A stretch of 64,000 bases of DNA from Klebsormidium nitens. Its lineage: Eukaryota; Plantae; Klebsormidiophyceae. The notes beneath the pieces were generated by a model. It ran no database searches, had not been told where the DNA came from, and saw only the letters and a list, made by a program, of their open reading frames with translations. Position numbers and translations under genes: made by a program. Location of the stretch: the NCBI GenBank assembly GCA_000708835.1, contig DF237254.1, forward strand, positions 41,898 through 105,897, given 5' to 3'. This document shows, one piece after another, positions 6,301 through 43,917 of this stretch (position 1 is its first letter; each line of letters starts with the position of its first letter).

Positions 6301-9300
6301 GCGACCGGGCTGCAGGAAAGCACCGCTGACTGGTCGCCCGCCGACGCCCGGAAGACGACGTCCGTCTTGCCGACGTTCCGCAGCGGAACGGTCTTGTGGA
6401 CAGGGGCGCCCACCGGAACCATGCCCAGGTCGAGCTTCTTATCCTTGAAGGCGCACTTGCCTTCCAGGCTCTCCCCTGCATTGAAACGGCTATTCCTTCA
6501 AATGGGCGTAGGCCATGCATGAACACCCCAATAAAATCGAGGGTAATGGGGCCCCAGAGTGGCCAAACTTCCAATCGGGTCCGTCCGAAAACGACTCGAA
6601 AGCTTTGAATGACAAATTTCGGACAGTTGAAATCGAACGCTCAAGGTTGTTGTCAGGTCACACTTTGCGTTCTTCCTGGGTTCCCTTTCTGCTCGATTCA
6701 CACACGTCTTTTCAATCACTCATCAAGATCCGGCCAATCTCTCGTCAAGCTGCGTTTCGCACTTGCTTCTGGAGACTTAATCAGGGCATGAATCTGCGAT
6801 ACCTGAATCGCAAAGACAGCCACCTACATACCGCAAATCAATACCGAACAGCTTTGCTTTTCACCAAAAGAGATACGCGGTATCAGAACCTTCTTTCCTT
6901 GACCTTCCTTTCTTGTCACATAACATACGGAAGCCTAGCTTTCTCTTGCTCACGAAAACCGCGGTACGTACCGCTACAGCGCACCCGCTTGCTCGCGCCC
7001 GCGCCCCCTACTACGCTCAGCGTCAGGAACCCGTCGTTGTTTCCGGTTCCGGGCCGCCACGTGACGGTGACCGGAACGGAACCCAACTTCTCGATCGCGC
7101 CCCGGGTTGGCGTGACCTCAAACGCCGGGTTAGAGCACTCCCACTGGTAGTCCGCAGTGTGGTTGTTCGGGTTATGGACGATTAACTGCTCGGTTATGCA
7201 GGGTTCCCAGTCGTCGGGTGTGTAGCGGAAGTCAATCTCCTCCCGGGAGATGGAGAGAGCGACCGGTTCTACTTCGGCGAGGACCTCCAACTGAAACCTG
7301 TGAAACCGGGGGAAGCAGTATCCGCTGAGTCAGGCCATCTTAAAAATCGAGTGGTTCCTCTCGTGATAGGCCAAGCTCTAATGGTGTCGTTAGGAAATCA
7401 CCAACTGAAGACCAGATCGTCAAGCTGAGCGAAAGCGGCTCGTGAGTTGTCAACATGTTTGTCTGTAGCCGGACCAAATCGGACGGCAAACGAGGAGATG
7501 CGGGAAGTTTTTAGGATTGTCTTCTGAAGGCTACGACGAGACGGGCACGGCGAACGGAACGGTTTAACGTCTGGCGCAAGGTCTTACGCGAGTACGCATA
7601 AGCTAGTAAAGCCCATTTCTCACGTGCAAAGAAGATTCTTTAAAAGTCGGACGAAGAACCCAGAGAGCGGGCCATTAAGAAGCAGGTGTCCTGACAAAGA
7701 CCCGTTTCGGTAACCAACATGAGAGCCCTGATTGTTTTCAGACACATCAAAGGGCTGGTCTTCGCGATTGGGGCTGGGTAGGAGAGTACACGTTTCAACC
7801 AATGGGATTGGAAACAAGCGGTTCGCCCCATCGTAAATTCGGACATCATGCGAGAACAAATCCTTCACGGAAGCATACGCTCCTTCATGAATGAACCGGA
7901 GTCCTCTTGGACTCATTCTAGAGGATTCTCTGAGACAGCCGACCGAAGGGATGTCTCCAAACCATTGTCCTTCATCTCAGCAGCTGCAAAGCCGGACCGT
8001 CCGATCCTTCCTGCTTACCTGTGCTGACCGTTAATGACGTACTCCACCTTCTGGCGCACCGTCTGCAGCTTGTTCGTACACAGCACGATCCTGAAGCCCG
8101 CCGTTGCCCCGGGGGGGATCACCTGGCTCTCCGGTTCGCTTTTCTCCAGCTCCGGTACGGACCGGGTCTCAACCCCGACCAGAATGCTCTTGTGCAGCTT
8201 GTTCGTGACTGTGAAAATCTTCGTGTGGGGCGCCAGAGCGCTGACCCGCCCAAAGTCGAGAGAATGAGGCCCTGCTACGATCTTCACGATGTCGCTCGGG
8301 CGTAATTGTGAGTGACACTCGTGCGCCTCCCCCGCTTCACAGGGCCTCGCCTTAAACTTTGCCACGGAGTGGATTTCGGACTCGGTGTTCGTTTGCAACG
8401 GACGGTTCTTCGGGCGGACGTACGAACCCTCCTTCCCGATCTCGTTTACGTCTTTGATCAGCCACAGCGGATCCTTCGCGAGCGGCAACTCCGGTTCGGG
8501 TTCCCTTAAGCCGGAGAACAGCGCTAACCCGAGGTTTAGCGCGTCGTCCGGGGGCGGAGGTTTAGCGGTCCCCCGGTTTTCTCGCTCCTCTCGTTCCATC
8601 CGGGCGCTCCGCAAGAAGGTCTTGTACTGATCGCGATGCTCGTCCCGCTTCGTTGACTCGTTCCTCGATAGCTTATGCAGCCCGCCGATGGCGTCGTCCT
8701 CCGCCTCCACTAACCCGCTCACTAATCCGCTGGTTAAGCCGCTGTTCGGGGAGACAGAAGTAAGCGCAAACCCGGTGCGTCTCTTCTCGGGCGACCGATT
8801 TGTTCCCCGCCCAACCGTTGCCGCCTTTACCGCAACCGTTGCAGGAGCTTTTCCGTCCACTCGCACCTCTAGTTTCTGCACGACCGGCCCCTTATCCGCC
8901 CCGCTTATGTCGCACGTCAGCACCGCCCGGCGAGGCCCGATGACTTTTGGATCAAAAGTGACGGCCACCAATTTAGACGCACGTGGGGGGATGATCCCGT
9001 GATCGGGTGCCACGTGGAACTCTGCTAAGCGTCCGAACTCGAACCGCACCGGGAGCTCAGTCTCTCCGTTCTCGAGCGTCAGCGTCTTCTTGACGCGGGT
9101 CTTCAAACCGGGCTCCCCGAACGAGAGGGCGGTCGGTGTGAATACAACCGAGGGCTCGACGCCCTGTCCCCAAATCGGGAGCTTCAGTCTGCGCTTCACC
9201 TCCTTCACATCGAAGATCGTCAGGAAAGAAAAGACTTGCTTTCCCGCACCCGCCGCAGGTTTCGTCGTCGAAAACCCCTTCATCGGCCCTTCTCTCGCAA

Positions 9301-11266
9301 CCGCCAACGTGATTACCACAGGTAATTCAGAAAACGGTGGCACCGTTCCGCTTGCCGGTGACACCGTCACACACTTCGACTTCGCCGCCTGGAGTCCCTC
9401 CAGCCTTTCAGCCGAGATGGTGTCAATCGGGCCGTGGTCCCCAGACCCCCGGCTGCTGTCCGGGTTCGTATACAGCCCCGTCTCATAGCTTATGGGCACG
9501 GGTCCGAGGTTTCGCAAACGCGCCCGCACCGTTTTGGAGCTCCCGAAGAACAGCGAACCGAAGTCGATTCTCCCCAGGGGCGTCCCGTCCTCCGCGCAAA
9601 AGTCCACTTTCTGGGGGGTGCTCGAGGCAGTGATTTCGACCCCCTGGGACTGAACTTGCCCCGGCTCCCCCCATTTAAACTCCACCCCCGCCTTAAAGTC
9701 CCCCGCATCTTTGGCCTCGTATGTGACTTTGACTTCTTCTCCAGAGTTCGGACCCAGAAACCCGCTTTGAGGTTCCACTATAACAGGGCAACTGTGATCG
9801 AAGCGTACCGACCATTCTGCCCCTTTTCCGCCTTTGTTCGAGATCGTCAGAGTCTTCTCGATTACGCTTCCTTGAGCAACCGCGCCGAGAAGTAGAACCG
9901 AGGGTTCGATGTGAAGGAAAGACTGGGGGAGAAGAGTGTGCAGCGGAATGCAGAGGGGGGGGCCTTGCTCTGTCTCGATGGTAAGTGCGCCGTGGACGTC
10001 CTTTTTGAGGGGGCCGTCTTGGCGGACCGTAACCTGCAACAGAGAAATCTGAATGTCACTTCACATGAAAAGATAAATATCCTGCAAACCACTATCAGCC
10101 GGAGCTGGTTATGAGTAGCAGCAACTTGTGCTACCGCCAATTTAGACTGATCCTTAAATCCCTGATGAAGAAGAAATCGGTTTGACCATGAAAGAGCGAT
10201 TTTACCAGGCACGGCGCTCCTGGTGACAGCCCGAAAGATCAGACTCTTCCTAAAGAAAGTATTGTTTCGACCCTTGTGAGGGCTAGAGGCCCAATAGAGC
10301 AGTCTCTTTCGGCAAGGTACGGCAGAGGGGCTCTGGAAACCCCGAGCGCTGCAAGCAAGTCGACCTGTCCAACTTCTGATGAGCATCCCATGAAAAAGGA
10401 AGGAAGGAAAAATGTGAATCCATGACACAGAGCATTGGCAGGATGGCACTGCCGAAGCTGGCTCTAATCTCCCTGTTCTGCTGCTCACGGTCTTTTCCTC
10501 TCCGCATTGACAATCGGATTACCAAATGTGGCGCGCAAGCTTTTCTCGAAGTGGAGAGAAGAGGAACATTCACAGAAACACTTGCGTGTAAAGTAGGACT
10601 TTGAAAAGGTTCCCATTCTGGCATTTTGACGAAGAGATCGTCGTCTTCTTTCTGTCATCATGTACTTTTGGCTTTTCTTACCACCAAAATCTGACCACCA
10701 AGTTCCCACACACAACTTTAGAGTGCAAGCTCAGAACTTGATACATCTTGACTTGTAGGATCCTAACCTTTCAGAATCTGGAAAGTGTATCCAGTATGTC
10801 CAAGCTATATTTTTCTCTCCAAATCAGAGACAAGATTACAATCAGCAATAAGCCTGCTGCCAAATTCAAGCAACAAGCCAAACAAGCGGTGTCAAAACGG
10901 CCAGACCCCCACCTTCACTTTCGTCTCTATCCCCGGGGCCAGCTTCACGACCCGGCTCGCTGACACCACCCCAAAGCACTCTGGCGTGGGGGGCAAAATC
11001 CGGACAGAGTGCGTGCGCACTGCATCCACATTCTTCAGTGTCAAGAACGCGTGCTGCTCCGCCCCTGTTTCCGATGCCTGGAAATTGACACTAGCTGGGA
11101 GGGCCCTGATGAAAGGATGCGCTCTTAGCAGGGGGGCCGCTGTGGCTGTGCTAGGGGCCCCCTCCCGGGACTGGCTGGCATTGGAATTGCCTGAGAAAGG
11201 AGTGTCGAGGCCTCGTTTTGGTACCGGCGGCGGCTCTGGCTGGGGGCCGGCCAGAGAAGCCGCCAT
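322..11266 (-). CDS. CFAP47: Cilia- and flagella-associated protein 47 (multiple ASH/Ig-like domains plus CH domain); 3' end continues beyond window start
   Basis: Spliced minus-strand exons with GT/AG and consistent phases: ~11266-10909, 10033-8020, 7297-~6972, ~6477-6214, ~5603-3818, ~3187-3030, 2586-~860, ~484-322. CH-domain motif 'SNFLSVPESVLLKWMTAHF..VTNFDADLRDGTVFYALL', repeated 'L.L.N.....' ASH-type beta segments and 'YTLTGTGEEPLSEGHVVLEC' match my recollection of CFAP47. Confidence 0.85.
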
Positions 11267-29210: not shown

Positions 29211-31615
29211 ATGGCGTCTCCTCCAATGAAGTCGCTTGGGCTCGTCCTTTTGGCCTTGTTTCTGCTCTCACAGGCAGCTCCAGCTTATGGGGCTCGCAGT
29301 CTGGCCCGTGGTGCAGTGGACAACCTCGTGTCAAACTTGCCTTCATGGATGATGCCAAGGTCCCTGTGCATCCCCACAGTGTCTTCCTGGGTGGAGAAGC
29401 ATGAGGGAAGGCATCGTTGTGTGTATGAGAACGAGCAGGGCGATAAGGCAGTGAGTTTCTGATCCAAGCCATCTATGTTTGATGCAGCCTTTCCTTCATG
29501 TTATTGTTGTTGCAAAAGGGTCCAGCTGAGACTTCCGTGCATGGGAGAGCTGTGCTCAACCTCTCCTCTGTCTGAGGTCATCAGAAAGGGTGACGATCTG
29601 TAAGCAAGGGGTTGATGAGCTAGTTTGGATTACTTGCTCTAGCATCAGAGTTGTAAGCAGATGTTGATAGCATATTTACCAGAAGTGGGTGCATGCAGAC
29701 CATCAGGGGTCCTTATGAATAGATCATGGGGGGTATAACCAGCCAGGCTCGTACAGGAGTTGACTGGCTATCAATTGTTGGGTGGTGGTCACAAAGGCAA
29801 TTACTGCTCTTTCTTACAGATGTGACAGAACTGTAAGTCTGAAACCTCTGGGCTTTCTTGTCGCAGCTTATCTACTATGTTCTGGAGCAATTTTGAGTGA
29901 GCCCTAAGGTCAGAATTGAGTGATCTGCTCCAGCAATTCAGACTGTCTCATATTAGATACTCAAACCCCTGCAAGGCTGGCCAACCTTCAAATTGCATGG
30001 TCTATGAGGTGGAATTCAACATGATGTATATCCTTAGCGCAGTGGGTTTTCTCTGCTGCAGATTGGTGTGAACTACAACCTTGAAGACGACCGCTCAGCA
30101 AGAAAGAGCGAGTTGAAGACGGTTCTGGCGGACTATGAGAAGGTTCTCAAGGGCGAGCAGTGCCTTAACGATGTACAGATTAGCGCCCTCCTACTTGCTG
30201 ACACAAAGCGCAAGTAAGATTGTGGTTCCAACTTGATACGTGTATGCTTCTCTTTGTGGCTGTGCCTGGAGTCTGCTTGTTGGTCTTAGGCACTGGTAAC
30301 GATTGACAAAGGTTGTTGTTGTTGACCATGGCGCCTGTCAGGATTTGGCCCCTTTTAAGGGTCCCCAAAGCCATGTAGCAACCAGTGGTGTAGTTGCAAG
30401 GTGGATTGTCAGTCTTCGGTTAGCCAAGGTTGGTGCAAGACCCAAGACTGGGTTCCTCCTTGTTTGTTGTAGGATTAAGGATTACGTTATGCAGGATTAA
30501 GGACTACGTTATGCAGGATTGGGTGAGCCGTTGTTTGTGTGGGACTGACAATCACTGCTTCTCTCATGATTGGGTTACCTGTAGTCTCCGGAGGATGGAT
30601 AAATCTGGCCATGCAAAGTCTGGGTCCATTTGTGAGTAATCCTGCTTGTGATGGTGATTGAGTTACTTATTGAAGACTGTCTTTACAGGCTGGACGAGGT
30701 TGCTGAGACAGTCCATAAGCTGGACGATCTCTGCTGCGACATTCAAGCAGTTCTGGCTGACCTAGACTGGTCTATGGGCCAGAAGGGGCTTGATGACTCT
30801 GACGTAAGGCTTCCTCGCATGTTTCTTGAGTTTGAAGTACATCTGCTTGGGTTAATTTTGGTTTAGCTCCAAGTCTTGAACACGCAGAGCCTTCTTGTTG
30901 GTTGTAGCAGATTATGGCTCCTAGACTGGGTTATACTCAGATTGGTGGTTTGGTATTTGGCATTGTGTTGGCATTGAGCAGTCAGAGCATACTGCAACCT
31001 GCCTTTTATCCTAGAGGTTCTAACCATAAGTGGCATTTCGACCTGTATTTTCCAAACTGTAAAATCCTAAAGTGTTCATCACAAGTTGCGTCCTGTAAGA
31101 TTTTGGCAGGCAAAATCTTTTTGCTCTGAGCAGACACGCTGATTTAGTGGTGCAATCTATGCTTATGTGTGGCGTTAATGCAGGTAACAATTCCAATTCA
31201 GATTCAAGGATCGAACTCATTTAGACAGGTCGACTCAATGGGTACAGGCAGTCCTGTGGGGAGTGGTTGCTGACAACGTGGGTTGTCTCAAGTTATAGCA
31301 CTCTCTTTCGGCAGAGTTGACAAGCTCATCAGTTCTATGGGTACTTAGAGAGATTGCTTCTATCAACTTGTTTTCCAATTGCCCGACTTTCTCTTACTGA
31401 ATTAGTCAGCTGAGTTGCTTATTGTCTTTTTGCAGTCTTTCTTGAAGGAAACTGAGAACGGTAACTGGGAAGATGCCGCAACAGCACTTCGTGCTACTAT
31501 CTGGTGCGTTAGCCACAAGAAGCGCTGCGATGCTGATGTGGCCAAGATTGAGAAGGGCTGCAGCAAGGGGTTGAACCTGCCCGACTTTGTGCATACGACC
31601 TACTCTCAACAGTAG
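29211..31615 (+). CDS. Secreted T4/GH24-like lysozyme-family protein (228 aa), catalytic motif degenerate
   Basis: Exons 29211-29450, 30062-30213, 30689-30803 and 31436-31615 splice in frame. Signal peptide (LGLVLLALFLLSQAAPAYG). HEG-x5-Y-x4-G-x3-IG motif, 'ADYEKVLKGEQCLNDVQI', 'QAVLADL..SMG..GL', 'GNWEDAATALRATIWC....RC' resemble eukaryotic T4-type lysozymes. Confidence 0.75.
30471..30520 (+). repeat. 22-bp tandem duplication in lysozyme intron 2
   Basis: aggattaaggattacgttatgc aggattaaggactacgttatgc aggatt. Confidence 0.85.
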
Positions 31616-31997
31616 GCTGGTCCGGCCTGACCGATATAAGGGGATGGCATAAGCGGGGGCTTATGTATTTCAAGGTGGGCCATCCCAGTTGTACAGTTTT
31701 GTCCTGAATAGAGTTGCGGCATTAGGAGATTTTGTAAAATTGCATATGGGATAATATGTTGAGTTTCACTCGCGATCCGTGTTTAGCAGCAATCGCAGCC
31801 CGCAGCGCGCGCCATCGAGTTGTATCATACAGGTAGTTTTTGTACCAACGGCGATGTTTGTTACTTTCGAGTGTATCAAAGTAGCCGATTGTAGCGTGTA
31901 AAGCTTCGCTAGCGCGCAGGAGAAGAGCATACCACTTTGTAGTAGGGCGTGGACTTCCAAGAACAATAGGTGGAACAACAAACATTTTTCATAATAG

Positions 31998-32131
31998 ACG
32001 GCATCTTTTTGGCACCCCTTCTTTGACGAACCGCGATTACCCTCTGTCTTGATTGCAAAACATGTCGTTTGCGCTCATTGCAAGGGGTGATCCCGGTTGG
32101 TCAAAGAGGGGTTGCCAAAATGCTTTGCCGT
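31998..32131. other. Imperfect inverted repeat / long stem-loop (~134 nt)
   Basis: acggc/gccgt, ttttggcacccc/ggggttgccaaaa, tctttgac/gtcaaaga, aaccg/cggtt, gattaccc/gggtgatc and ttgcaa/ttgcaa pair in nested order. Confidence 0.75.
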
Positions 32132-33614
32132 TTGTTTGCATCACATTCGTTGTCGTCTTCTCTTCTCCTCTCGAATTCAGAGCTATGCAAGGTTGAAACG
32201 AGTCTAGACTTTAGTTACAAGAATGGATTGCCTAATACTCGGTTATTTCGGGCCTAGGACATTCCTATATTCTCAAACAGCATGATTAGAACGAGTTGTA
32301 TCGTAACTGCACGGATTTGTGGAATGGTCGGAACCGTTGGTTCACCATAGGTGTCAATTCTGCCACCTAGTCTAAACCTCATGCAGAACATCTATGCATG
32401 TGTCGGTTTTATAGATATGCTTTTGCGACCCGCTTAATAGATTGTCGTAGATATCTTAATAATTCGCATGCAAATCACATGTATTACTCTGACATGCAGC
32501 GCCAGCATTGTATAGATATCGGTAATTACTCTCGTGTGAGGCCTAAGATACGAGTTACCCGGGCACCTCCAACCAAAAACCGAACCCAGATACCTAATCA
32601 CCCGCTCCGCACCCCACCCCAGCCTAATCACCATGCCATCCCCACCCGTCCCCCGGGTGCACATCTTAGATCACGCGGCACTTAGGTGCCACGAGAGTAA
32701 TATATCGGAGTATTGTCTATAGTACCTCATGCACTAACACTTACCTACACACAAAACTTAGTAAACTTTCATGGCGAAACTTGATGTGTGAAAGGAGCTG
32801 GGCGTATACAACATATGCGCATTGGCATTATGAGTCTATCACAATGCACGCGGAGATACGTTAGTGACGGCAGCCTCTCTTCAAATATACGCGTAGTCGT
32901 ACGTGACCATGCCACTGAGAAACTTAAAAGTATGCAATCACTTGGACGGACGTGTCTTGTGTGCGCAGACATATGCGGGGACACAGTGGTGCACGTGACA
33001 TGGTGACGCAGTCGGGATACCTATCATTTGCAAGTCAAAATCTCGACTTGATTGACTCTTGCGGTTTAACGTACATCATCAAGCACAATTTATCATCATG
33101 TCATAAAGCGGATTGCAATCACGGCTCTTACGTGAGGTATTAGACTCAACGGTATTAGACTCGGTTCCCTCGACGTACGTACTGAAACAATCCATCCGAG
33201 GTACTTTTGAAATCATAACGCTTGAGATCAAACACCTTGTCAAAGAATGATACGTATATTCTTCTGCAGTTTGCGTGCGAGAGTTGGTAGTACTTACAAC
33301 TTCGTCCTACAGTGCTATCTAATTCATACCCTGCTTGATCAACTTCAATCAGAAATATTCAGGCAGTCGTATTGTGAACATGCTCAGCTTAAACCCTCAG
33401 CCTATTCCAACTGACTCCTCAACGCGGCCTCCACCCCGGTTGTTTGCCCCGGGCAGATTTGGCAGATTTTTAAAATTCTCCCCTCTGGTTCCCCTGGGCG
33501 CTTGTTTGTCCCCCGGCCGACGCTCCCTTTCTTCCCGGAGCGATCCCCCTCCTCCCCCAGGGGGAGAAAATCGTCGTTTTCATGCTATTTCTTCCTCTAA
33601 TTTTTACGATTTTA

Positions 33615-36600
33615 TCAAAGCTTGGTGTACCCCGACCGCCGCCCGGGGTTCTGCGTCACGCAGAACGCGAACACGAGGCACGCCCCGGCCACGACGCACG
33701 TCCCGAACACGATCAACAAGTCGATCATCTTCGCCTTGGGGCCCGGTTCGTAGCACGTGCTGTTCCCCCAGGGCCCGAAAATATTGGGTTTGTTAACCAA
33801 CTTGGGTTCCGGCCGGGTCGCTGCCCAGAAAAGCACCCAGGATTTGGTGGTTGTCGGGTCCATTTGGTAGGGTTGCAGGTTAACCAGCGTGCTCCAGGCG
33901 GCGGTCACGTTGATGATGGCCAGGTTCGAGTAGAGCGCGCTCGTCCACGTGTTGTTGACCTGCGCGCGCGCGGGTTTGGGGGTTTTTTACGGGACGAACG
34001 GCAGCGGTCTCGGCTTAGGAGTCGATAAGCAATCAGGAAGGCTGATCGCTCTTCTCATTATCTGGAGCAGATCATTCCTGGCATGGAGGACGTTCGGCGG
34101 TGCGCAGAGAAATGCGGTTGAGACTGCGAAGGCAGCAGGTCGGGCTCTTTGCCGTGCACACCTTTCTTGTATGAGCGCGACCGAGATGCGAGACGCAGAA
34201 TTCGACCGTATGTATCAGAGAGCCGTTCAGTGGACCTTTTGGGCTCAATTTGAGACATCGAGAAGCTCAGCAAACCCCAGATTTTGATTGTCCGGTTCCG
34301 AAACTCAGATTTGGACTTGATCGGAACGCCTAGTCACAGGTTTTGCAGTCCTGTGAGCAGATCCAAGCGAGTATGAGCCGCATCCTTTGGGTCGTGATTG
34401 GATGTGTCCGCCACCAAATCACCTTTTGAGTGTTGTTTCCTAGTACCTCCTTGCAATTGGTGCGCAAAAGTAGTCACAGGCCGAGCTTCGTCAAACGTTC
34501 GCCGTTTTGCGAACGAACTGGCAGGGCGCCCTTGGACTCTGTTTCACAGATGGGTCTTCGACTTATACTCGGCAACATGAAATGTCTCAGAAAAACCAGC
34601 GGGGGAGGGAATTTACAAAGGGCGCGTAAATCCAAAGTTCTTCAACAGAAACTAGAGGGGAGAAAAACTCACGAAGGGCGCGTAGTCCTGGAGGCGCATC
34701 GTCCACTCCTCGAGCACGAAGTCCGGGAACCGTACGATCTCCATGGGAAGGATCATCGGACGCATGTGCTGTCCGTGGATTGCCTCCGTCGAGTTGTCCG
34801 CATACGTGGCGTACGTCACCTGAAAAGCAGGCGTGATGACGTCAGCGAAAGCGAGATGCCAACCGATTTACGTCAGGGCAGGTTGGAAGCAGACCGTCCA
34901 GACGGTTAGCGCCAGAGCGGGGAGAGTTGACGTGGGGATTACGTCATTGGCTTTCCTCCACTTGCAAGTGATGTGACATCCAATCCGGCTCCGCGTTGAA
35001 AAAAGATCAACTTCGTGTGACGCGGCCAAACGGTCACTTGATGATTTGACATGGAAACAAGGGAAAAGGCTTAAAAATCTGGTGAAGAAACTTCTTCGAA
35101 ACAGTGAGAATCTGGTGAAGATTCTCGAGCCACGCGAGGCACGCTCCAAAAGAATCAGTGCCCATCAAGGGTGGTCTTCGGCAGAGTCTTCCTGACTGTG
35201 ACAGGTCTCAAAAGTCACCGGAAAAAGTTCCAACCTGCCGCAAAGCGGGCTGTCGACGCCGTTACCATCGGGACAGGTCGTCAACGAGGGAAAGAAATAG
35301 GCCAATACTTACATTCGGTCCATCCTGCACTCTCACCAACCCAGAACCAAAAGCCCACAAACTCGTTAAATTATGAAAACACAGCCCCGGCATTCGCCGG
35401 CATCTATCACTGGGCAACAGAACATAGACAAGTATCGGTTCTTTGCTGGGAACCCAATTTGCCCCTTCAAGGTACACCCAAATAAACAGAGAATCCAGCT
35501 TCCACCGGCCCCTATCACCGGGCAAAAACCGAACAGTTCGGCTCTGACCTGTCCCTCGGTGGCAATCCCCGCCACCTTGTTATCGCGGTACTTGTAGGGG
35601 CACGCGTTCTGGGCCTTGTTGATAAGGAAGTAGCGCCGCGCGGTGCGCCGCGAGACCGCGAAGAGCGCCATGCCCAGGTTCTGGATGTTCTGCTTGCTGG
35701 AGGCGAGCCCGTACAGCCGCACCGCGTGCGCGAAGTTGATCTCCTCCGCAACCTGTGCAGGGTTCAAGAGGTTTAAGGCTTGAACATCTGAGATTAAGGG
35801 CTTGGCACTGAGGATTCTTATTCTGAGTGCTGAAACAGTACGTACAGCCGCACCGCGTGCGCGAAGTTGATCTCCTCGGCGACCTGCGCAGGGTTTAGCG
35901 GAGTTTAGGCGTGGTCAAATATAAGTTCAAGGGGTTCAATCATTGGGTTTATCGGTTGAGCAGACAATCGTTTTGCTGGCCACTGATCTGAACAGTTCCA
36001 TAACATACGCGAAATTGATCTCTTCTGCCACCTGTGCAACAAGCTCGCTTGGTAGAGCTGACTAAATATCCATCAGATAGCTGTGGCTGCTTTTCTGTAC
36101 TCCAAGCAAGAGCAACTTTCTCCGCTCAGCCATTCCGTACTCCTCATGCTCATACTTTCTTCCCCGCTGACGTCACATTACGACTCACCGAAAGCACGTC
36201 CCGCCCGTTTGCTGACGTGTCCACGAGGCCCTTCCCCCAGTTGTGCCCGTGGAACCAGTCAAAGCTGCGGAACGTCGGGTAATACGTGTCGAGCGCCGAT
36301 GGGTTGGCCACATCGCGTATGAGCTCCTCAATGAAAGCGCCGTTGGTCGTTCCCCACGTGCTGGAGTAATAGCGCAGAACCGCGGCCGCGTAAATGAACG
36401 GGCCGTAGTTGTAGTGGTGGTAGTTGTAGTACGTGTTGCCGTTGTCGGTCAGGTTACCCTGCAAAAGAAGGGTCAAGGAGGTGCGTTAGAAAGACGAAGC
36501 CCGCGTATACACGGGCACGTAGTTGTTGCCGTTGCCGGTCAGGTTGCCCTCAGAGATTGGGTTAAGACGAAATTGGGGTAAGGAGTTTGCCCTGGCAACC

Positions 36601-39600
36601 TCAAATGGCGGGTCGGAAAGGTGGCGTAACGATGCAGTAGTTTTAACACGTGGCCGAAACGGGAGGTCAAAAACGATTATTTTCTTTTGGCAACCAAGTG
36701 AATGCTGACGTTCTGCTGGATGTCGTCTACTTGGCAAATATAAGGACTTCAAAAGTTTGAGACTGTTAAGCTAAGGCCCAAGCTTCTCCGGATCAACGAA
36801 ATTGGCCCTTCCTCCTCTTCCTTTTCTGGCTGCACATGCTACGGTGAGTCTTGGCCGCACCTGACCCAGCTCTTTCCATCCTTCACGATTCAGTTTCTTT
36901 CACCAAACATTTTCCCATAGCACAATCTACAAGGCATGCTAATGTTCGGCGACCGCGCGGCTCACGGTGTTGCCCTTGATGTCGCTGGACGAGACGAGGC
37001 CCCCCCAGGTGGCGTCGTAGTTGAGAGGCGTCAGCTGCTTGTTCTTCACGAAGTTGGCCATCGCTGACGTCAGCTTCGTGATGCAGTCCTTGTTGCTGAC
37101 GCCCACCACGTCCGCGGCCTGCGTGCAGAACGTCAGCGGAGGTTTAGACCGGGTTTGAGTTCGCGGGGTTTCAAGGGTGGTCCAGCTGGAGGTTGCTAGC
37201 GTGCTGTGAGAACCAGAAGGGATGAGACTAGCCATAATTACGAGGCTGTTTGTATATGTCAAGGAAACATTTTTCGTGGGCAATATGAAACACAGCAACC
37301 AAGAAAGGTGAGAACAGGTGCGCGACGAGTCTCCTCCTCTGATTGTTTTTGAGTACATTCATAAAGATCCTGGTATCCGGCAAAAGTCGGAGCAGGAGCT
37401 GCTCCTGCTCTGTCAGGAGAAGGGCAAAAAGCAGTAGAAACCGAGTGTGGGGGATGAGAGACGGCTATAGTGTACCTGGCAGAGCATCGCGTATTTCTGG
37501 AGCTGCCGCCCGAGCTCGTAGTTGGACGACTGATTGCCGGTCGTCGCCGAGAAGTCGAGCGCCAAATCGTCGATCAGAGCGGCCACCACGCCGTCGTACT
37601 GCGTGGGTTAAAGTTAACCCGTTCAAACCAGATTCTCATTTTCAAAGAAGTCAGCGGAAAAGGAAAGTTCGTGAGACAATCTTTGGAAAAAAATCTTTTA
37701 AAAAATCTTCCGGGGAACTTCGATCGCCTATTTCCAGTCTGCCCATTCTGGAAAATTCCACAGAGGCATTGAAGCATGAGAGCAGAGGATTGATGTTTGA
37801 GCATGTCATAGACACACTAGACGCACACTTTCGCCGAAAGATTCCTGGGTTAAGAGTTAAACCTACCTTGTCGGTTTGCATGGCGTTGGGCGGAGTCCAC
37901 GTAATGGTCCCCGTGTCCCCCTCGCGCAAGATCCACCGATCGCCCTCGAACGCTTGCATCATGCCCTGCCACAACAAAACGAGTTTTAGAAAAGGGTCTG
38001 AAACTTGTCACGGGTTGGAATGCTTTGAGGTTGGCCGTACCGCGCAGTACGTCTAATTTAGTGTATCAGTCATTCCGGAACGTGCCACAGTCGGGATGCA
38101 GTCGACTCGGCCAGATTGCGCAATTCCACCTAGAAAGCTTCTAACTCGAAATATGACAAAGTTCGCACTGATTCCTGCCAAGAGTTTTGATTGGTCGTAG
38201 CTTCAACGCTAGCAAAAAGTGGAGCGCGTCAGGACGGTCAAACAAGTTGAAGCCAGAGATCCTGGCTCTGAACGGGTCCCACGAAATTCGACTAAGCGGC
38301 TTAGCCTCACCTTGGTCGCGCCCCTCATGGCGAGATTAGTGAAGCGGAATCGTAGCTTCAACATTAACGAAAAGCGAAACGAGTCTAAACGGTCTAACAA
38401 GTTCAAGCCAGAGAGCCTGGTTCGGAACGGGTCCCATAAAATCCGGTTAAGCAGCTTAACCTCACCTTGGTCGGGCTCATCATGGCGAGGTTAGTGAGGC
38501 GGAAACTCGAGGTCGTGGCGTTAACGATGGTGTCCTGGTGGTGCGGGAAGCCAAAGTGCAGCATGGGAATGGTCACATTGGCGACCGTACCGTTGGCGAA
38601 CTTGAATGTCTGACTGTTGGTCGCGCCCGCGCCCTCGGCCTGGAAGCAACAATTTTGGGGTTTGAAATTCAGGATTCAGCGGTTAAGGATGTTGGGTCAG
38701 GGTTTTGGTGTTGGCCGCGTCCGCGCCCTCCGCCTGGAAGCAACAGTTTCAGGTTAAGGGTTCTGGGTTTGGGATCTAGGGTCGACGTTTCCGGGTTTGG
38801 TTTCGCGGTTTCCAGGGTCAGGGCTCAGGAGTCGGGGTTCAGTTATTGGAACGTAAGAGTTGGGTTTTCATTTCGGAAGTTCGATGATGAGCCCTCTGGT
38901 GAGAACCGTGCGAGGGGGCTGTAAATGCAAGAGAATATGCGGAAGGCCATTAAAATGCCCTGTAGAGAGGCGCTGCTAGCAGTAAGGTGACAGGGTTGAC
39001 TCTTGGGTCAGCACCCGGAGTACGCGCATCGAGCTCCAGGAAAACCCTTAGAGCGCAAGATTAAGCTACATAGGAAGGAAACCTTGTGGACTTATGAAGG
39101 AATCAAACAGTATGGAGTCTGGAGTAAGTAGATCGCCGTGTCCTTGCAGACCGCACTTTTCTTCGCTTTCACCTACCGCTCTACCTATCAAGCGTGTCGA
39201 TTCCATCGGTCAGCATAGAATTGCAATCGCACATCTTTTGCACTCAAAACGCAAACCTCTGATTATTGGAAAGACCGAAACTAGATTGTCGGCTCACCGC
39301 CACGTTCCACTTGAAGTAAATGTACGCGCCCGCGAGGCCCGTGCCGAGGACGGTCACGTTGAGCTGCCCGCCAATGGGGTAGCGCCACCTGTGCGAGTCG
39401 TACAGTGACGTCACGTAGCTCGTGTTGGACTTGCGGTAGATCTCGTTGAAGCAGAACTGCGTGTTCTTGTTGTTGGGGATCTTCGCCAGGCGGAGCGTGC
39501 CGGTGACGGGGCCTGAAAGGAGGGGTTAGCTTATGGGTTAGCTGAGGGTTACAGGGGATTAAGACGCGGGTTTACAACGCTCCCAGCGGTGGTTTGAACG

Positions 39601-42600
39601 GTGGGTTTGCTGAAAAGTGTTCTTGTTGTTCGGGATCTTGGCCAGGCGGAGCGTGCCGGTGATCGGGCCTGAAAGGAGGGGTTAGTTCGCAGGTTAGCTG
39701 GGGTTACAGGGGATGTAGATGTGGGTTAGCAACGCTCTCACAGGTGGTCTGAACGGTGGGTTTGCTGAGAAGTGCGTATTGAGATCCTGCTTAGGCGCGG
39801 CGTGCCGTCAACGGCCTCCCATTGGATGGGTTTTCAACGATGCCTATGAGGAGACCAGAAGTGAGATTGCATCAATCTTTGATTGCTCAAGCTTCGGAAA
39901 TAGCTGATATCATTGAGATTAGTGTGGACGAACGTTTCAGTATTTAGAGTGGCAGCCTGCCTAACGCGACCAATAGCCCGATGAGCAGCCGTCCCATAAT
40001 TGAGATGAACAATTTCCAAACAGAACGAGCGGCGAAACTGAGCGGAACGCACTGAAAGACAACTGAAGCTCATCAGTAAAGAATCAATATAACAGTCGTA
40101 GCGGCGTGACAAACTCCTGCTCTACAAACTGCTAGTCCCCACTCACTCTCCGCTGTCAGGTTTTGTCAGAGTTTCATGGCTCACCCGATGCTCTGAGCTC
40201 CTTGCCGCTATTGGACAGGGTCAGGGACGCGCTGAGGGAGTACAGCAGCCACGTGTCGCCGTTTGAGAGGGTGATCGTGAACCTGCGTCAAAAACGCACC
40301 GCTCAGTATAACGCACCAGTGGCGGGGTCACAAAATTCAAAAAAAAAGTGCTTCCGGCTCAGCTCATTCTAGCTTTCGGCTGTGGCGTAATGAGCTCGTA
40401 CTGAAGTCACAAGCACCAGCACTCCGAAACGACGGTCTTATCAGCGTCAGACCGCTTTAAGGAAGATTCGTAAGCGCTTCCTTCAATCCCCCTTCTATCG
40501 CGGTTCGGCCGTTCCCTCCGTAATATATAATCCCTCAGAAAGAGTCAACGAGACACTTCGCAAACGGCTGGCGCGTACGAAAATCCGCTCCAGAGTTGCA
40601 CAGAAGAAACGCACAACCTTTCGGCATGCCCAAAGCGGCACAGAACAAAAAGCTGTGCGGAACACCCAAAAGCGAAGTTTCTCAGGACCCGCCTTTTGAA
40701 ATGAATCGTAGATGAGCCTCTCACTTTTTGCCCTCATCGCCCACAGCCGTCGATGCCGCCACGCCCGTGATGCTGTGCGCCGTGTAGATGACAGGTGTCA
40801 GCCCCGCGTAGTTGGCCGTGACGTAAGCCATGCCCTTGACGAGGGGGAACGTCAGCGAGGAGGTGCCCCCCGAGGCCTTGTAGACGAGTGTGGCCGAAAA
40901 CTCGTCGAAGGCCGTCACGGTGTAACCCAGCCCGGTCTCGGCCGAAGAGAAACCCATGTCGGCCTGCTTCGCGGTCGTGTAGCTCTGCAGGGGGGAATGG
41001 TGACGTCAGCGGGTTGTGACGTGTACGAAGTCTGAGAAGGGAGAGAAAGTGTGTGGAAGGAGCTGAAGTCCCTTCCAATCTAAGATGGAAGCCAACGGCC
41101 TTCGAAGGATCGGCACTGAATGAGCCCTGCTCCGCTTGCTCTGCGTTTGAAATCGTGAACGCTGAGAGGAGGAGTCTTCATCTGTTGCCTTTTGATCTGC
41201 CAGAGCTGAGCTCGAACCCTGCGTCAGCAGCTGTCCCAATGTGCTCATATATTGCCACGTAGAACTCTGTTGTGATTCTTTGCACAAGCTTCGATGGCGT
41301 CCTTTTGTATTAGCCTGTTCGTCAGCTCTGCGGAGTGTTTCCTTGCTGGAGTGCTTTGCTGACGTAGCAAAGAAGGAAGCTTTTCTGTCCACATTGTGAT
41401 CTGCAATCCTTCAAAGAAGCTATGAGTGCGATGTAGACCTTGCGCTTTTCTTATCTACGGTGAGTACGACAACACTTCTTTCACCGAATAGAACTGTTCG
41501 GTAAGTCGCATCCGCTGGCGACCATCACTTCTCCGTCTTCTTTGAACCTCCCAAGACTTCTGCCTCTCACAATTTTGATTCAATGTTCAAAGACGAGGCT
41601 GTTCCTATGTTCCTGCACCGATCATCTCACGAGCAGATTCTCGTTCGCAAACCAAGGCTTTAGCAGGACGCCAGACTTGTTCGTTTGTCCAGCTGCCATT
41701 TGTTTTCTTTCAGATGACAGCTGTAGATTTGTACTGCTCGACAGCTGTACAAATCCGAAGCGCTACCCCTTCAAATTTGCTTGATGTGATATGCTTGCAG
41801 CTCGACAACCTGCTCACTGAGTTTCTTTTGGACCTCTGTTTCAGCTTTTTCTCCTCGTTGATTCCATTTTAGTTGCCTGACGACTCATGTTCTGCTCACA
41901 AGAGAATCAGAAGCAACGTCGGCTTGGATAGCAACTGGCGTAATCCATGATAGCAGGAGGTTCTTTCATTGGAGGACTTTGTCCCAGGATCCAGCAAGGT
42001 TTGCATCCGAGCAGATGGCTAAATTTGTTTTTGTGGAATTCGAGCTTTCCAAAAGGGGAACCAAAAGGCCACCTTAGATTGCTCACCATAGCCCTGTCGC
42101 TGGCTGCCTTTGCAGTGAACATGTTGACCGTGGGCTCATCCGCATGACTGATGCTCAGCCCAAAAGGCGCCACAGTGTTGGGCTGCAAATGGAAGAGTCT
42201 CATGTAAGTTGGTTTATCTAGTGGTAAACAAAATCCTCTCAAGTTCTTAGTTGTCTTCCATAGCATCAACCCATGTTTGACATCAACTCTGCTCTGTGGC
42301 TCCTCAACTCGTGTCTTCTAGCGCTGCGTGCCCTTTGCGCTGCAGACCTGTTGTGATCCACTTGAGACCTGAAGTGATGGTCATCTACCCTCACAAATTG
42401 CAATGCTGATGCACTTAGCTTTTGGGTACGAATCTTCTGGAATTAGCAGCATTTTGGACCGCCCCGCCAGAATGGTCAATTGCTGTATCTTCAATAAACA
42501 GATCTCCAACCTTGCATCAGCAGAGCTTTATCTTTCTCAGCACCTTCTTTCCACCATGCACGAGTATACAAGAGAACACGCCTTCAGGCCCCACCAGATC

Positions 42601-43037
42601 TCATCTTCATAAACTGCCCACTTCAAGGATTTGCCTGTCAATGAGCAGAAGCTTATGAGACTTACCCAGACCACATATGGATTCACATACACGTTCCCCG
42701 TTCCCGACCCAAACACCAGGCTCGTCCAGAATTCATTTGTGGGGATGGGCTTCTTCAACAGCGCGGCATCCAGGTTCTTTGGCGTGACGGGATGCGTCAC
42801 CGATGTGAAAAGCGTATTGGGCTTGGACGTTGAGATTGGGTCCGTGGGGTTTGTGCTCAGAGACGTTGTGCTTGCGGTTGTGGGGGCAGTCGTGGTTGTC
42901 CCCCCCGAAGTACTGGGGGTGGTTGACCCCCCCCCAATGATGAACGGGTTCGTGGTCGCCGCATTGGACACCCTGGTCAGAGTCGGGCTCAGCACGCAGA
43001 GGGCGACCAAAACGAAGGCTCTGTTAGTGGGCGCCAT
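33615..43037 (-). CDS. Glycoside hydrolase family 81 (endo-beta-1,3-glucanase-like) protein, 851 aa, with signal peptide, Thr/Ser linker and C-terminal TM helix
   Basis: 13 exons (43037-42666, 42182-42087, 40984-40725, 40282-40185, 39512-39298, 38639-38466, 37965-37867, 37598-37476, 37118-36966, 36458-36189, 35752-35549, 34819-34673, 33959-33615) total 2556 nt with no internal stop. GH81 motifs PIPTNEFW, PLVKGMAYVT, GDTWLLYS, FPHH, YDATWGG, HHYNYGPFIYAAAVL, LIRDVANP, FRSFDWFHGHNW, EAIHG, KSWVLFWAATR. Confidence 0.9.
38650..38870 (-). repeat. Degenerate GGGTTT/AAACCC tract in a GH81 intron
   Basis: Repeated gggttt/ggttaagg/gggtc units on the + strand, i.e. AAACCC-rich on the gene strand upstream of the acceptor at 38640. 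Confidence 0.75.
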
Positions 43038-43917
43038 TAGTGCTCTGGTACCCCCCCTCTCTTCAGATTGCCCACTAAGCGGTGCGCTTTGCATGCACCC
43101 CTTTCCCCGCGTGTATCCTCATTCCGCAATGCTGTCTGATTTTCCTCGTCTCTGTCAAAGGATCCGGTCAGCCACCTTCCAGCGACACCTTTCAGGAGCA
43201 ATGCTGTTGATCTTCCTAAGTCGAGGCTTCTTTCCTGCGATATTTTCAAAACCTAGCGAACATTTGCCTGTCTTCCTGTCCAATGCCGTTCTTTCCCCTC
43301 TACCAAAGACTGTGTTTTGACCGACTAGCCCGTGCATGGCAGGCCGGTTGCACTGTCTTCCAACTTTAGAGACGTTGGAAACAGTGGACAGGCTGGCGAA
43401 GTGCATCTGGTGTCTGGCGCAAGACTCATGTCGTTGCAATGCTGAGATTCAGAAGCTGCTGAGCAGCGCCTCCGGCTGATGGATTCTCAGAATCATTCCG
43501 TCATCGATGCACAGGACCGCGGAAAATGCATACGGTATGTCAGAGCAGACTGTCGCATGCATTGACATTCGGCCGGTTTGCAGTTTAAACGAGTTCCTAG
43601 TGAGTGCAGATACCGTACATGCGGGTGGCCTCTTGTTATGCGCGCGTGGAAAATTGGAATCTACGAATTGGCCGTCCACGATCTTCAGCTACTACGAATC
43701 GACGGCGTAGGTTCACGCGGCACTGTCAGCGCGCCCGTGCACGAGCCGGCCGCGAGCTTACTGCGCAGGCTCACGAGTTAGCTGTCTCTTAAGTTTGCGG
43801 CTGGCTCTTGAACTTGAAGTTGTGAAGCAGGCATTGCCATTCAATGCCGTTGCCATCTGCGATGCTTGGCGCCAGGCTTGACAAAGCGGGCAAAGCCGCC
43901 TTTCATCGGTGGTCAAC

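What the first reader, a model, noticed from the sequence alone, without database searches (positions are those of the whole stretch)
35700..36458. GH81 protein with intact frame but both catalytic carboxylates replaced: probable beta-glucan-binding pseudoenzyme
Seen: the universal GH81 motif (Y)NDHH(F/Y)HYG reads YNYHHYNYG (Tyr codon at 36420-36422). The DGRNQESTSEA motif, reassembled across the 36189/35752 junction, reads NGRDVLSVAEE, so the first Glu is Leu (36192-36194) and only the second Glu remains. All 13 exons stay in frame and surrounding substrate-binding aromatics (WGG, FDWFHGHNW, W..WAATR) are kept. Established: in characterised GH81 enzymes the NDHH Asp and the first Glu of ESxSE are the catalytic acid/base pair, and the soybean GH81 glucan-elicitor-binding protein binds oomycete beta-glucan. 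Inference: selection preserves binding but not hydrolysis, giving a lectin or receptor.
Basis: partly seen in the sequence, partly recalled or inferred. Interest (0 to 1): 0.88.

Follow-up and report, generated by a model that had tools for sequence, protein, structure and literature searches.

The report
Conserved membrane-anchored dead GH81 glucanase homologue
An expressed, intact 13-exon gene encodes a membrane-anchored relative of beta-1,3-glucanases (family GH81) that has lost two of its three catalytic carboxylates yet has been kept under strong purifying selection in three related species, so it is a working non-enzyme, most likely a glycan-binding protein, rather than a broken gene.

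Summary
A 13-exon, 870-residue GH81 gene lies on the minus strand (43094-33615). It reads YNYHHYNYG (Asp to Tyr, 36420-36422) and NGRDVLS|VAEE (first Glu to Leu, 36192-36194; second Glu kept). RNA-derived contigs confirm junction 36189/35752 without edits.

The loss goes beyond two residues. Of 27 columns at least 97% conserved in 176 full-length GH81s, this protein keeps 20, the fewest of all. The changes are K488R, D562Y, H566N, Y569P, F609Y, S622N and E638L.

It is not decaying. A syntenic metagenome contig carries a full orthologue with the same 13 exons. Over 728 codons dS is 0.72 and omega 0.12, lowest (0.05-0.085) in exons 6-10 around the former active site. Tyr, Asn, Pro, Asn and Leu are kept in three species; the Tyr and Leu codons differ only synonymously (Leu: CTT/CTC/CTG). 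All 11 N-glycosylation sequons, the C-terminal membrane helix and the GYT(K/R)L tail are conserved.

A conserved pseudoenzyme is therefore well supported. Glucan binding and a receptor role remain inference, because the cleft is remodelled. A relocated catalytic residue cannot be excluded without a structure.

Dead glycoside-hydrolase homologues are known in other families; I found none described for GH81. The scan has not noted this on other DNA.

The parts
42666..43094 (-). Exon 1: start codon, hydrophobic signal-peptide-like stretch (residues about 26-39; probable cleavage after VSNA), Thr/Ser-rich linker, start of the GH81 N-terminal domain
   Evidence: The orthologue in L002 keeps the same layout, with indels only in the Thr/Ser-rich part.
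42087..42182 (-). Exon 2
   Evidence: Same length and AG/GT borders in L002.
40725..40984 (-). Exon 3 (GH81 N-terminal domain, PF03639)
40185..40282 (-). Exon 4
   Evidence: The exon 4/5 junction appears as the loose end of an RNA contig in run X2.
39298..39512 (-). Exon 5
38466..38639 (-). Exon 6 (FPHHQD motif)
   Evidence: Omega 0.07.
37867..37965 (-). Exon 7
   Evidence: Omega 0.05.
37476..37598 (-). Exon 8
   Evidence: Omega 0.06.
36966..37118 (-). Exon 9
   Evidence: The junction to exon 10 is confirmed by an RNA contig in run X4. No amino-acid change against L001.
36189..36458 (-). Exon 10: former catalytic centre, YYNYHHYNYGP ... FDWFHGHNWG ... NGRDVLS
   Evidence: Omega 0.08 against both orthologues.
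36420..36422 (-). Tyr562 codon in place of the invariant Asp (Asp475 of 4k35)
   Evidence: Codons TAC/TAT/TAC in the three species.
36399..36410 (-). Asn566 (99% His in GH81) through Pro569 (99% Tyr in GH81)
   Evidence: Both kept in L001 and L002.
36240..36242 (-). Asn622 in place of the 98%-conserved Ser of GHSW
36192..36194 (-). Leu638 codon in place of the first Glu of E-S-x-S-E
   Evidence: Codons CTT/CTC/CTG in the three species. The equivalent Glu to Ala change inactivates barley GBP1.
35549..35752 (-). Exon 11, starting VAEEINF. Glu642 (35744-35746) is the retained second Glu.
   Evidence: Junction 36189/35752 lies in a 319-nt RNA contig of run X1.
34673..34819 (-). Exon 12 (IHGQHM in place of IHGIHM)
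33615..33959 (-). Exon 13, including the stop codon
   Evidence: 88.6% amino-acid identity to L002.
33657..33728 (-). C-terminal transmembrane helix, residues 834-857
   Evidence: Kyte-Doolittle mean 2.63 over 19 residues. One conservative change in L002.
33618..33656 (-). 13-residue cytosolic tail TQNPGRRSGYTKL ending in a GYxxPhi-type motif
   Evidence: The tail is TQTPGRRSGYTRL in L002.

Best explanation
The gene encodes a type-I membrane glycoprotein. Its layout is: signal peptide, Thr/Ser-rich stalk, complete two-domain GH81 ectodomain, one transmembrane helix, and a 13-residue tail ending GYTKL.

The GH81 catalytic centre has been taken apart. The invariant Asp is Tyr, the first Glu is Leu, and the neighbouring His, Tyr and Ser are Asn, Pro and Asn. 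Canonical inverting hydrolysis of beta-1,3-glucan should therefore be lost.

The replacements are old and are themselves held by purifying selection. The protein is thus a functional pseudoenzyme.

The most likely mode of action, which is inferred and not shown, is non-hydrolytic binding of a glycan in the retained but remodelled cleft. Beta-1,3-glucan or a derivative is the first candidate ligand. The binding would occur at the cell surface or in an endosomal or vacuolar lumen. The tyrosine-based tail would direct adaptor-dependent trafficking. Any signalling would need a partner protein.

Shown: gene structure, expression and splicing, residue replacements, selection, and conserved topology features. 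Inferred: loss of activity, binding, ligand identity and trafficking.
For: Gene and family:
- The gene model has 13 GT..AG exons and 870 codons.
- GH81 N- and C-terminal Pfam domains are present.
- The protein is collinear with full-length GH81s at 32-37% identity.

Replacements:
- Asp475 of 4k35 aligns with Tyr.
- Glu1 is Leu and Glu2 is kept.
- The protein keeps only 20 of 27 columns that are at least 97% conserved. That is the lowest of 177 sequences. Equally long-branched canonical GH81s keep 26-27.
- 21 of the 22 departures from the 85% consensus lie in the C-terminal catalytic domain.
- Mutating the first Glu abolishes activity in barley GBP1.
- BhGH81 variant chains in PDB differ from wild type only in the E-S-x-S-E region.

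Expression:
- Spliced RNA contigs cover both key codons with no differences.

Selection:
- A full syntenic orthologue (L002) has identical exon lengths and splice sites.
- Omega is 0.12 at dS 0.72 over 728 codons, and 0.05-0.085 in exons 6-10.
- A second orthologue fragment (L001) gives omega 0.05.
- 20 of the 22 derived residues are identical in L002.

Topology:
- The transmembrane helix, the tail and 11 of 11 N-x-S/T sequons are conserved.
- Canonical GH81s P0016 and P0127 share the C-terminal anchor plus short tail, so the anchor predates the loss of catalysis.
Against: - No binding or activity data exist.
- No 3D model could be made, because the spliced protein has no reference usable by the fold tool.
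- Several residues that are near-invariant in active GH81s, and probably touch substrate, are also replaced. Beta-1,3-glucan may therefore no longer be the ligand.
- Lineage-specific acidic residues conserved in both orthologues sit next to conserved cleft segments: E485, D696 and D715. They could in principle supply new catalytic groups.
- RNA support is thin: single contigs at depth 2-9, and intron-only contigs are also present in the same runs.
- The signal peptide and the meaning of the tail motif are judged by eye and from general knowledge.
Confidence: 0.6

Rival explanations
1. It is still an enzyme. Catalytic groups have moved (for example Glu642 plus a lineage-specific Asp or Glu), or the activity has changed to transglycosylation, another linkage or another substrate. 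On this reading the conserved remodelled cleft reflects a new chemistry rather than mere binding.
For: - The second Glu (E642) and many cleft residues are kept.
- The derived residues are strongly conserved, and the lowest omega lies around the old active site.
- Three acidic residues specific to this lineage and conserved in L002 lie beside conserved cleft segments: E485 next to Tyr484, D696 next to Asn697, and D715 next to the F714A change.
Against: - Two of the three invariant carboxylates are replaced by Tyr and Leu, together with the adjacent His and Tyr.
- A single Glu to Ala change at the first Glu already inactivates barley GBP1.
- No described GH81 has any activity other than endo-beta-1,3-glucanase (PMC9609564).
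- Migration of both acid and base is rare.
Confidence: 0.15
2. It is a conserved non-enzyme whose role is not glycan binding in the old cleft. Candidates are a protein-protein scaffold, a wall-to-membrane linker, a decoy for foreign glucanase inhibitors, or an abundant glycosylated lysosome- or vacuole-membrane protein.
For: - Many substrate-site residues are replaced.
- A heavily N-glycosylated lumenal domain (11 conserved sequons) plus a very short tail ending G-Y-x-x-hydrophobic resembles lysosomal membrane glycoproteins. The resemblance rests on my own knowledge of LAMP-type GYxxPhi tails; the sequence facts come.
Against: - The strongest constraint sits exactly on the exons that form the former active-site region (omega 0.05-0.085).
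- Most conserved aromatic and polar cleft residues persist: Y484, Y560, N561, H563, W584, R597, D598, D616, W617, H621, W623, S639, E642, W746 and W761.
Confidence: 0.2
3. It is a decaying pseudogene, or an artefact of the exon model (wrong junction, or an alternative exon carrying canonical residues).
For: - There are intron-only RNA contigs and duplicated 'echo' copies of the exon 11 and exon 10 starts inside the introns.
- No full-length orthologue was found in the 5.8-billion-protein set.
Against: - The frame is open across 13 exons in two species, with identical exon lengths.
- Omega is 0.12.
- The junction is seen directly in RNA.
- The echo copies encode the same VAEE start and offer no canonical Glu.
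- There is no second GH81 in the window.
Confidence: 0.03

Closest known systems
Active GH81 endo-beta-1,3-glucanases (Rhizomucor miehei Lam81A, PDB 4k35/5xbz; Bacillus halodurans BH0236 GH81, 5t49; Clostridium thermocellum Lam81A, 6fop)
   Same: It has both Pfam domains and is collinear over about 700 residues. It keeps 68 of 90 consensus columns, including the second Glu, the FDW.GH.W block and RDVANPS.
   Different: Asp to Tyr, first Glu to Leu, His to Asn, Tyr to Pro and Ser to Asn at near-invariant positions. It has a C-terminal membrane anchor. It sits on a long branch (1.6 against a median of 0.27) with no relative above 40% identity.
Membrane-anchored canonical GH81s from protist transcriptomes and assemblies (P0016, P0127)
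   Same: Signal peptide, GH81 ectodomain, one C-terminal transmembrane helix and a short basic tail; P0016's tail has a Tyr-x-x-Ile motif. All sit in the same broad non-fungal clade.
   Different: They keep Asp/Glu/Glu and 27 of 27 strict columns. They are presumably active enzymes.
Plant GH81 beta-glucan-binding proteins (soybean GBP, barley GBP1)
   Same: They are GH81 proteins that bind beta-glucan and were proposed as part of a perception machinery.
   Different: Barley GBP1 keeps the catalytic centre and hydrolyses laminarin, and E500A inactivates it. Soybean GBP has a hydrolase domain beside its elicitor-binding site. Barley GBPs are not required for glucan-triggered ROS. No specific relatedness to the plant clade was tested here.
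Invertebrate beta-1,3-glucan recognition proteins (betaGRP/GNBP/LGBP), which are GH16-derived
   Same: The logic is the same: a glucanase homologue that lost its catalytic residues and serves recognition (own knowledge; reviewed in PMC7915573, which was read for other points).
   Different: The fold is unrelated (beta-jelly roll). These proteins are secreted and bind mainly through a separate N-terminal module.
Chitinase-like lectins of family GH18 (for example YKL-40, Ym1)
   Same: They are glycoside-hydrolase pseudoenzymes in which loss of the catalytic acid leaves a glycan-binding cleft (own knowledge).
   Different: The family, fold and ligand differ, and they are soluble.

Membership tests
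GH81 (sequence family) | Match to the GH81 N-terminal domain PF03639 above the gathering score | tested here: met
   Exon 1 scores 31.2 bits and exon 3 scores 48.7 bits, against a cut-off of 25.6.
GH81 (sequence family) | Match to the GH81 C-terminal domain PF17652 above the gathering score | tested here: met
   Exon 10 scores 106 bits and exon 11 scores 38.2 bits, against a cut-off of 25.6.
GH81 (sequence family) | Full-length collinearity with characterised or annotated GH81 proteins | tested here: met
   36% identity over residues 75-779 to P0005. It clusters within a GH81 tree.
GH81 (sequence family) | Beta-sandwich plus (alpha/alpha)6 barrel fold | not tested
   The spliced protein has no reference that structure prediction accepts, so no model was made.
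Active GH81 endo-beta-1,3-glucanase (EC 3.2.1.39) | Invariant Asp of the N-D-H-H motif | tested here: not met
   It is Tyr562. The column is 100% Asp in 176 GH81s and aligns to Asp475 of 4k35.
Active GH81 endo-beta-1,3-glucanase (EC 3.2.1.39) | First Glu of E-S-x-S-E | tested here: not met
   It is Leu638. The column is 98% Glu. The Glu to Ala change is inactive in barley GBP1.
Active GH81 endo-beta-1,3-glucanase (EC 3.2.1.39) | Second Glu of E-S-x-S-E | tested here: met
   Glu642 is kept, also in L002.
Active GH81 endo-beta-1,3-glucanase (EC 3.2.1.39) | Hydrolysis of laminarin or curdlan | not testable with these tools
   Needs a biochemical assay.
Pseudoenzyme (functional, non-catalytic homologue) | Catalytic residues missing while the fold-defining sequence is kept | tested here: met
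   It keeps 20 of 27 strict columns and 68 of 90 consensus columns. The losses concentrate in the catalytic domain.
Pseudoenzyme (functional, non-catalytic homologue) | Purifying selection after the loss | tested here: met
   Omega is 0.12 over 728 codons at dS 0.72. The derived residues are conserved in three species, and the Tyr and Leu codons differ synonymously.
Pseudoenzyme (functional, non-catalytic homologue) | Expression of a correctly spliced mRNA | tested here: met
   Three junctions are seen in RNA-derived contigs of four runs, at low depth.
Pseudoenzyme (functional, non-catalytic homologue) | Demonstrated absence of catalysis | not testable with these tools
   Inferred from residue loss only.
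Beta-glucan lectin or pattern-recognition receptor | Binding of beta-1,3-glucan | not testable with these tools
The cleft is partly remodelled.
Beta-glucan lectin or pattern-recognition receptor | Signalling-competent cytosolic part or a known co-receptor | tested here: not met
   The tail is 13 residues long, with only a Tyr-based sorting-type motif.
Type-I membrane glycoprotein | N-terminal hydrophobic signal, one C-terminal transmembrane helix, conserved N-glycosylation sequons in the ectodomain | tested here: met
   The hydropathy scan finds one segment, 833-859. All 11 sequons are conserved in L002. The signal peptide was judged by eye.

The most novel reading that the evidence does not exclude
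The protein is a cell-surface, endocytically cycling receptor built from a dead GH81. It would capture beta-1,3-glucan, either from the walls of fungal, chytrid or oomycete parasites or from the alga's own wound or callose glucan. It would then deliver the glucan, or report it through a partner, using a LAMP-like GYxxPhi tail. This would be an algal counterpart of animal betaGRP or Dectin-type glucan sensing, evolved independently from a different hydrolase family.
Probability: 0.15. Interest if true: 0.75.

Novelty: new variant of a known kind. Interest (0 to 1): 0.5.

Why it matters
GH81 is regarded as a single-activity family, endo-beta-1,3-glucanase. The plant 'glucan-binding proteins' of this family that have been characterised enzymatically are active enzymes.

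This is a well-documented natural case of a GH81 whose catalytic machinery is gone. It is backed by splicing, synteny, omega and codon-level evidence, and the remodelled cleft stays the most constrained part of the protein.

If it binds glucan, it gives a ready-made non-hydrolysing GH81 scaffold for studying beta-1,3-glucan recognition. It would also be a candidate component of glycan sensing in a little-studied alga.

It further shows that a membrane-anchored GH81 architecture existed before catalysis was lost.

The claim is modest. Dead glycoside hydrolases reused as binders are familiar from GH18 and GH16.

Tried and rejected
1. I aligned all 13 exon translations to P0005 to build a pseudo-full-length query (A1). 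MAFFT scattered the fragments, so I discarded it.
2. I built a cleaner profile from P0005 plus exons 3, 10 and 11 (A2) and searched the 5.8-billion-protein set. Only generic GH81s came back. The profile scores the window protein at 475 bits locally, which would rank second. No full-length orthologue is therefore in that set.
3. Exon 10 as a query found only the fragment P0033.
4. Two degenerate DNA patterns, for YYNYHHYNYG and FDWFHGHNWG, gave 0 hits in the JGI metagenome contigs. Yet a protein look-up later found JGI contigs carrying the orthologue. Its motif reads YNYHQ, which explains the first miss. The second miss is unexplained.
5. The primary structural papers on GH81 (Pluvinage 2017; Zhou 2013) are not held. 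Full-text searches for the catalytic residue names found nothing. The acid/base roles therefore rest on the barley mutant, on an indirect comparison of PDB variant chains, and on my memory.
6. I did no structure prediction. The spliced protein exists only in my scratch files and may not be typed in.
7. I considered whether the intronic echo copies could supply an alternative exon with a canonical Glu. They encode the same VAEE, and the observed transcript skips them.
8. I considered RNA editing at the two codons. The contigs show no differing letters.
Full report
**What is there**

On the minus strand between 43094 and 33615 lies a 13-exon gene. Every intron is GT..AG, and the joined exons give one open frame of 870 codons. 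The exon coordinates are listed under parts.

Pfam places the GH81 N-terminal domain in exons 1 and 3, and the GH81 C-terminal domain in exons 10 and 11. The whole protein is collinear with full-length GH81s at 32-37% identity.

The N-terminus has a hydrophobic signal-like stretch followed by a Thr/Ser-rich segment. The C-terminus has one strongly hydrophobic helix (residues 834-857) and a 13-residue tail, TQNPGRRSGYTKL. There is no second GH81 in the window.

**The observation**

- Exon 10 (36458-36189) reads GNLTDNGNTYYNYHHYNYGP...FDWFHGHNWGKGLVDTSANGRDVLS.
- Exon 11 (35752-35549) starts VAEEINF.
- phmmer against PDB aligns the Tyr at 36422-36420 with Asp475 of Rhizomucor Lam81A.
- NGRDVLS|VAEEINF aligns without a gap to DGKDQESTSEEINF of the closest full-length relative. 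So the first Glu is Leu (36194-36192) and the second Glu is kept.

In a MAFFT alignment with 176 full-length GH81s these three columns are 100% Asp, 98% Glu and 99% Glu. Apart from two sequences with gaps there, only one other sequence has any replacement in the triad, and none has two.

**The loss is wider than two residues**

Of 90 columns at least 85% conserved, the protein keeps 68. Of the 22 changes, 21 lie in the C-terminal catalytic domain.

Of the 27 columns at least 97% conserved it keeps 20, the lowest of all 177 sequences. The changes are K488R, D562Y, H566N, Y569P, F609Y, S622N and E638L. Canonical GH81s on equally long branches keep 26 or 27.

So this is targeted dismantling of the catalytic centre, not general divergence. 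Many are kept (Y484, Y560, N561, H563, W584, R597, D598, D616, W617, H621, W623, S639, E642, W746, W761). Several near-invariant ones are not.

**Is the loss inactivating?**

In barley GBP1, changing the first Glu to Ala abolishes laminarin hydrolysis (bioRxiv 10.1101/2023.04.12.536646).

The BhGH81 variant chains in PDB score like wild type in the N-D-H-H region but 1.3-1.4 bits lower in the E-S-x-S-E region. This fits substrate-trapping mutants made in that motif, but it is an indirect inference.

I recall, without a held source, that yeast Eng2 mutagenesis also found the Asp and both Glu essential. The exact acid/base assignment could not be checked.

**Expression and splicing**

Four runs of one study (coded X1-X4, organism A, labelled 'RNA?') were laid on 33600-39550, which is within the 6,000-letter limit.
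- One 319-nt contig joins 36189 to 35752.
- Another contig joins 36966 to 36458.
- A third contig ends at 39512 and continues with the last bases of exon 4.

The contigs cover both key codons with no differing letters, so there is no editing.

Depth is low (2-9). Three contigs lie wholly in introns, which points to pre-mRNA or some DNA in the libraries.

**Selection**

Exon 10 as a query retrieved one fragment, P0033, from a Logan contig (L001). L001 carries orthologous exons 9 and 10. Over 141 codons dS is 0.36, dN is 0.019 and omega is 0.05, while the intron between them is only about 52% alignable.

Exon 11 as a query retrieved P0263 from a 93-kb JGI metagenome contig. The fetched locus L002 carries the complete orthologue.
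- All 13 exons are present.
- Exons 2-13 have identical lengths and AG/GT borders.
- The exons of the downstream neighbour gene are in the same order.

Over 728 codons the amino-acid identity is 85.7%, dS is 0.72, dN is 0.087 and omega is 0.12. The lowest values (0.05-0.085) fall in exons 6-10, the region around the former active site.

Tyr562, Asn566, Pro569, Asn622 and Leu638 are present in all three species. The Tyr codon is TAC/TAT/TAC and the Leu codon is CTT/CTC/CTG.

Of the 22 derived residues, 20 are identical in L002. So are 62 of the 64 retained consensus residues that lie in exons 2-13.

All 11 N-x-S/T sequons are positionally conserved. So are the Cys pattern, the helix and the tail, which reads TQTPGRRSGYTRL in L002.

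A decaying gene is excluded. The derived state predates the split and is maintained.

**Relatives and distribution**

The protein sits on a long branch (1.6 against a median of 0.27). It lies in a poorly resolved non-fungal GH81 group that includes protist transcriptome sequences, a raphidophyte (Chattonella) sequence and rotifer genes. Nothing exceeds 40% identity.

Two canonical members of that group, P0016 and P0127, have the same C-terminal anchor plus short tail. The membrane-anchored architecture is therefore older than the catalytic loss.

A profile that scores the window protein at 475 bits found no comparable hit among 5.8 billion proteins. The lineage is known only from this genome and two environmental or assembly contigs.

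A few other GH81 clusters have single replacements or a degenerate second domain: P0001, P0010, P0041, P0046, P0064 and P0087. Full-text searches found no paper describing a GH81 pseudoenzyme.

**How it most likely works**

The shown facts support a functional, membrane-anchored, glycosylated pseudo-GH81. The strongest constraint lies on the old cleft, and many sugar-binding-type residues persist. From these I infer non-hydrolytic glycan binding there, with beta-1,3-glucan as the first candidate ligand.

The tail is too short to signal. Its conserved G-Y-x-x-hydrophobic end resembles tyrosine-based sorting signals (own knowledge). So trafficking between the surface and an endosomal or vacuolar compartment is plausible.

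My rough odds:
- Non-catalytic: about 0.8.
- Glycan binding in the cleft: about 0.5.
- Beta-1,3-glucan specifically: about 0.35.

**Rivals**

A neo-enzyme cannot be excluded. Three lineage-specific acidic residues conserved in both orthologues flank conserved cleft segments: E485, D696 and D715. A non-glycan structural or scaffold role is also open. Pseudogene and mis-splicing readings are contradicted.

**Context from the scan (unverified leads)**

Other notes on this genome report further glycoside-hydrolase-like genes with replaced catalytic residues. They include a GH17-X8 protein and the neighbouring lysozyme-like gene. One follow-up calls the genome algal. I did not verify the organism. 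CFAP47/CFAP65-like exons in the window show it is flagellate.

**Verdict**

The pseudoenzyme reading is well supported. The lectin or receptor function is plausible but untested. This is a new variant of a familiar theme, dead glycoside hydrolases kept as non-enzymes, in a family where none seems to have been described. Interest is moderate.

Noticed in passing
window 35841-35913, about 35990-36045, 36519-36550, 39617-39774, 38195-38504; L002 9927-9957, 10293-10352, 10442-10501, 6251-6276, 9580-9606: Introns of this gene hold tandem 'echo' copies of exon-intron junctions, covering either acceptor plus exon start or exon end plus donor. Most repeat periods lie near 130-166 nt. The orthologue has them too, partly at other junctions and spacings; its exon 11 start echo is 72 nt upstream and 97% identical. 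This suggests recurrent duplication or gene conversion. The observed transcript skips the two echoes in intron 10. By eye, echo-versus-exon differences are about 7 synonymous to 7 non-synonymous, so there is no clear coding constraint.
   Followed up: partly
window 31995-32132 (minus strand); L002 13677-13790: A long hairpin of about 125 nt lies in the intergenic DNA between the GH81 3' end and the next gene. It folds at -67 kcal/mol with z = -8.1. Both arms are almost invariant in the orthologous contig, while the loop and flanks differ. Only sub-threshold Rfam miRNA-precursor matches were found. It is a candidate conserved miRNA-like precursor or structured element.
   Followed up: partly
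window 29343-31593; L002 14124-16720: The exons of the neighbouring gene are conserved in the same order and orientation in the metagenome contig. Another first-stage note calls this gene a T4-type lysozyme-like gene with altered catalytic residues. The two glycoside-hydrolase-like genes are therefore syntenic neighbours in both species.
   Followed up: partly
window 700-10039 (minus strand): Large open exons carry CFAP47, CFAP65 and HYDIN-type Ig-like domains and a CH domain. This looks like a cilia/flagella-associated giant protein gene and shows that the organism is flagellate.
   Followed up: no
proteins P0001 and P0010: These long proteins (about 1640 residues) carry two GH81 modules. One module reads Y-W-H-H in place of Y-N-D-H-H and lacks the second Glu. 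They are tandem active-plus-degenerate GH81 architectures from unknown organisms.
   Followed up: no
Metagenome-contig scan versus L002/L003: The exact degenerate pattern for FDWFHGHNWG found nothing in the JGI metagenome contigs. Yet L002 and L003, which are JGI contigs, encode that very peptide. The pattern scan and the protein look-up therefore seem to cover different sets of records.
   Followed up: no
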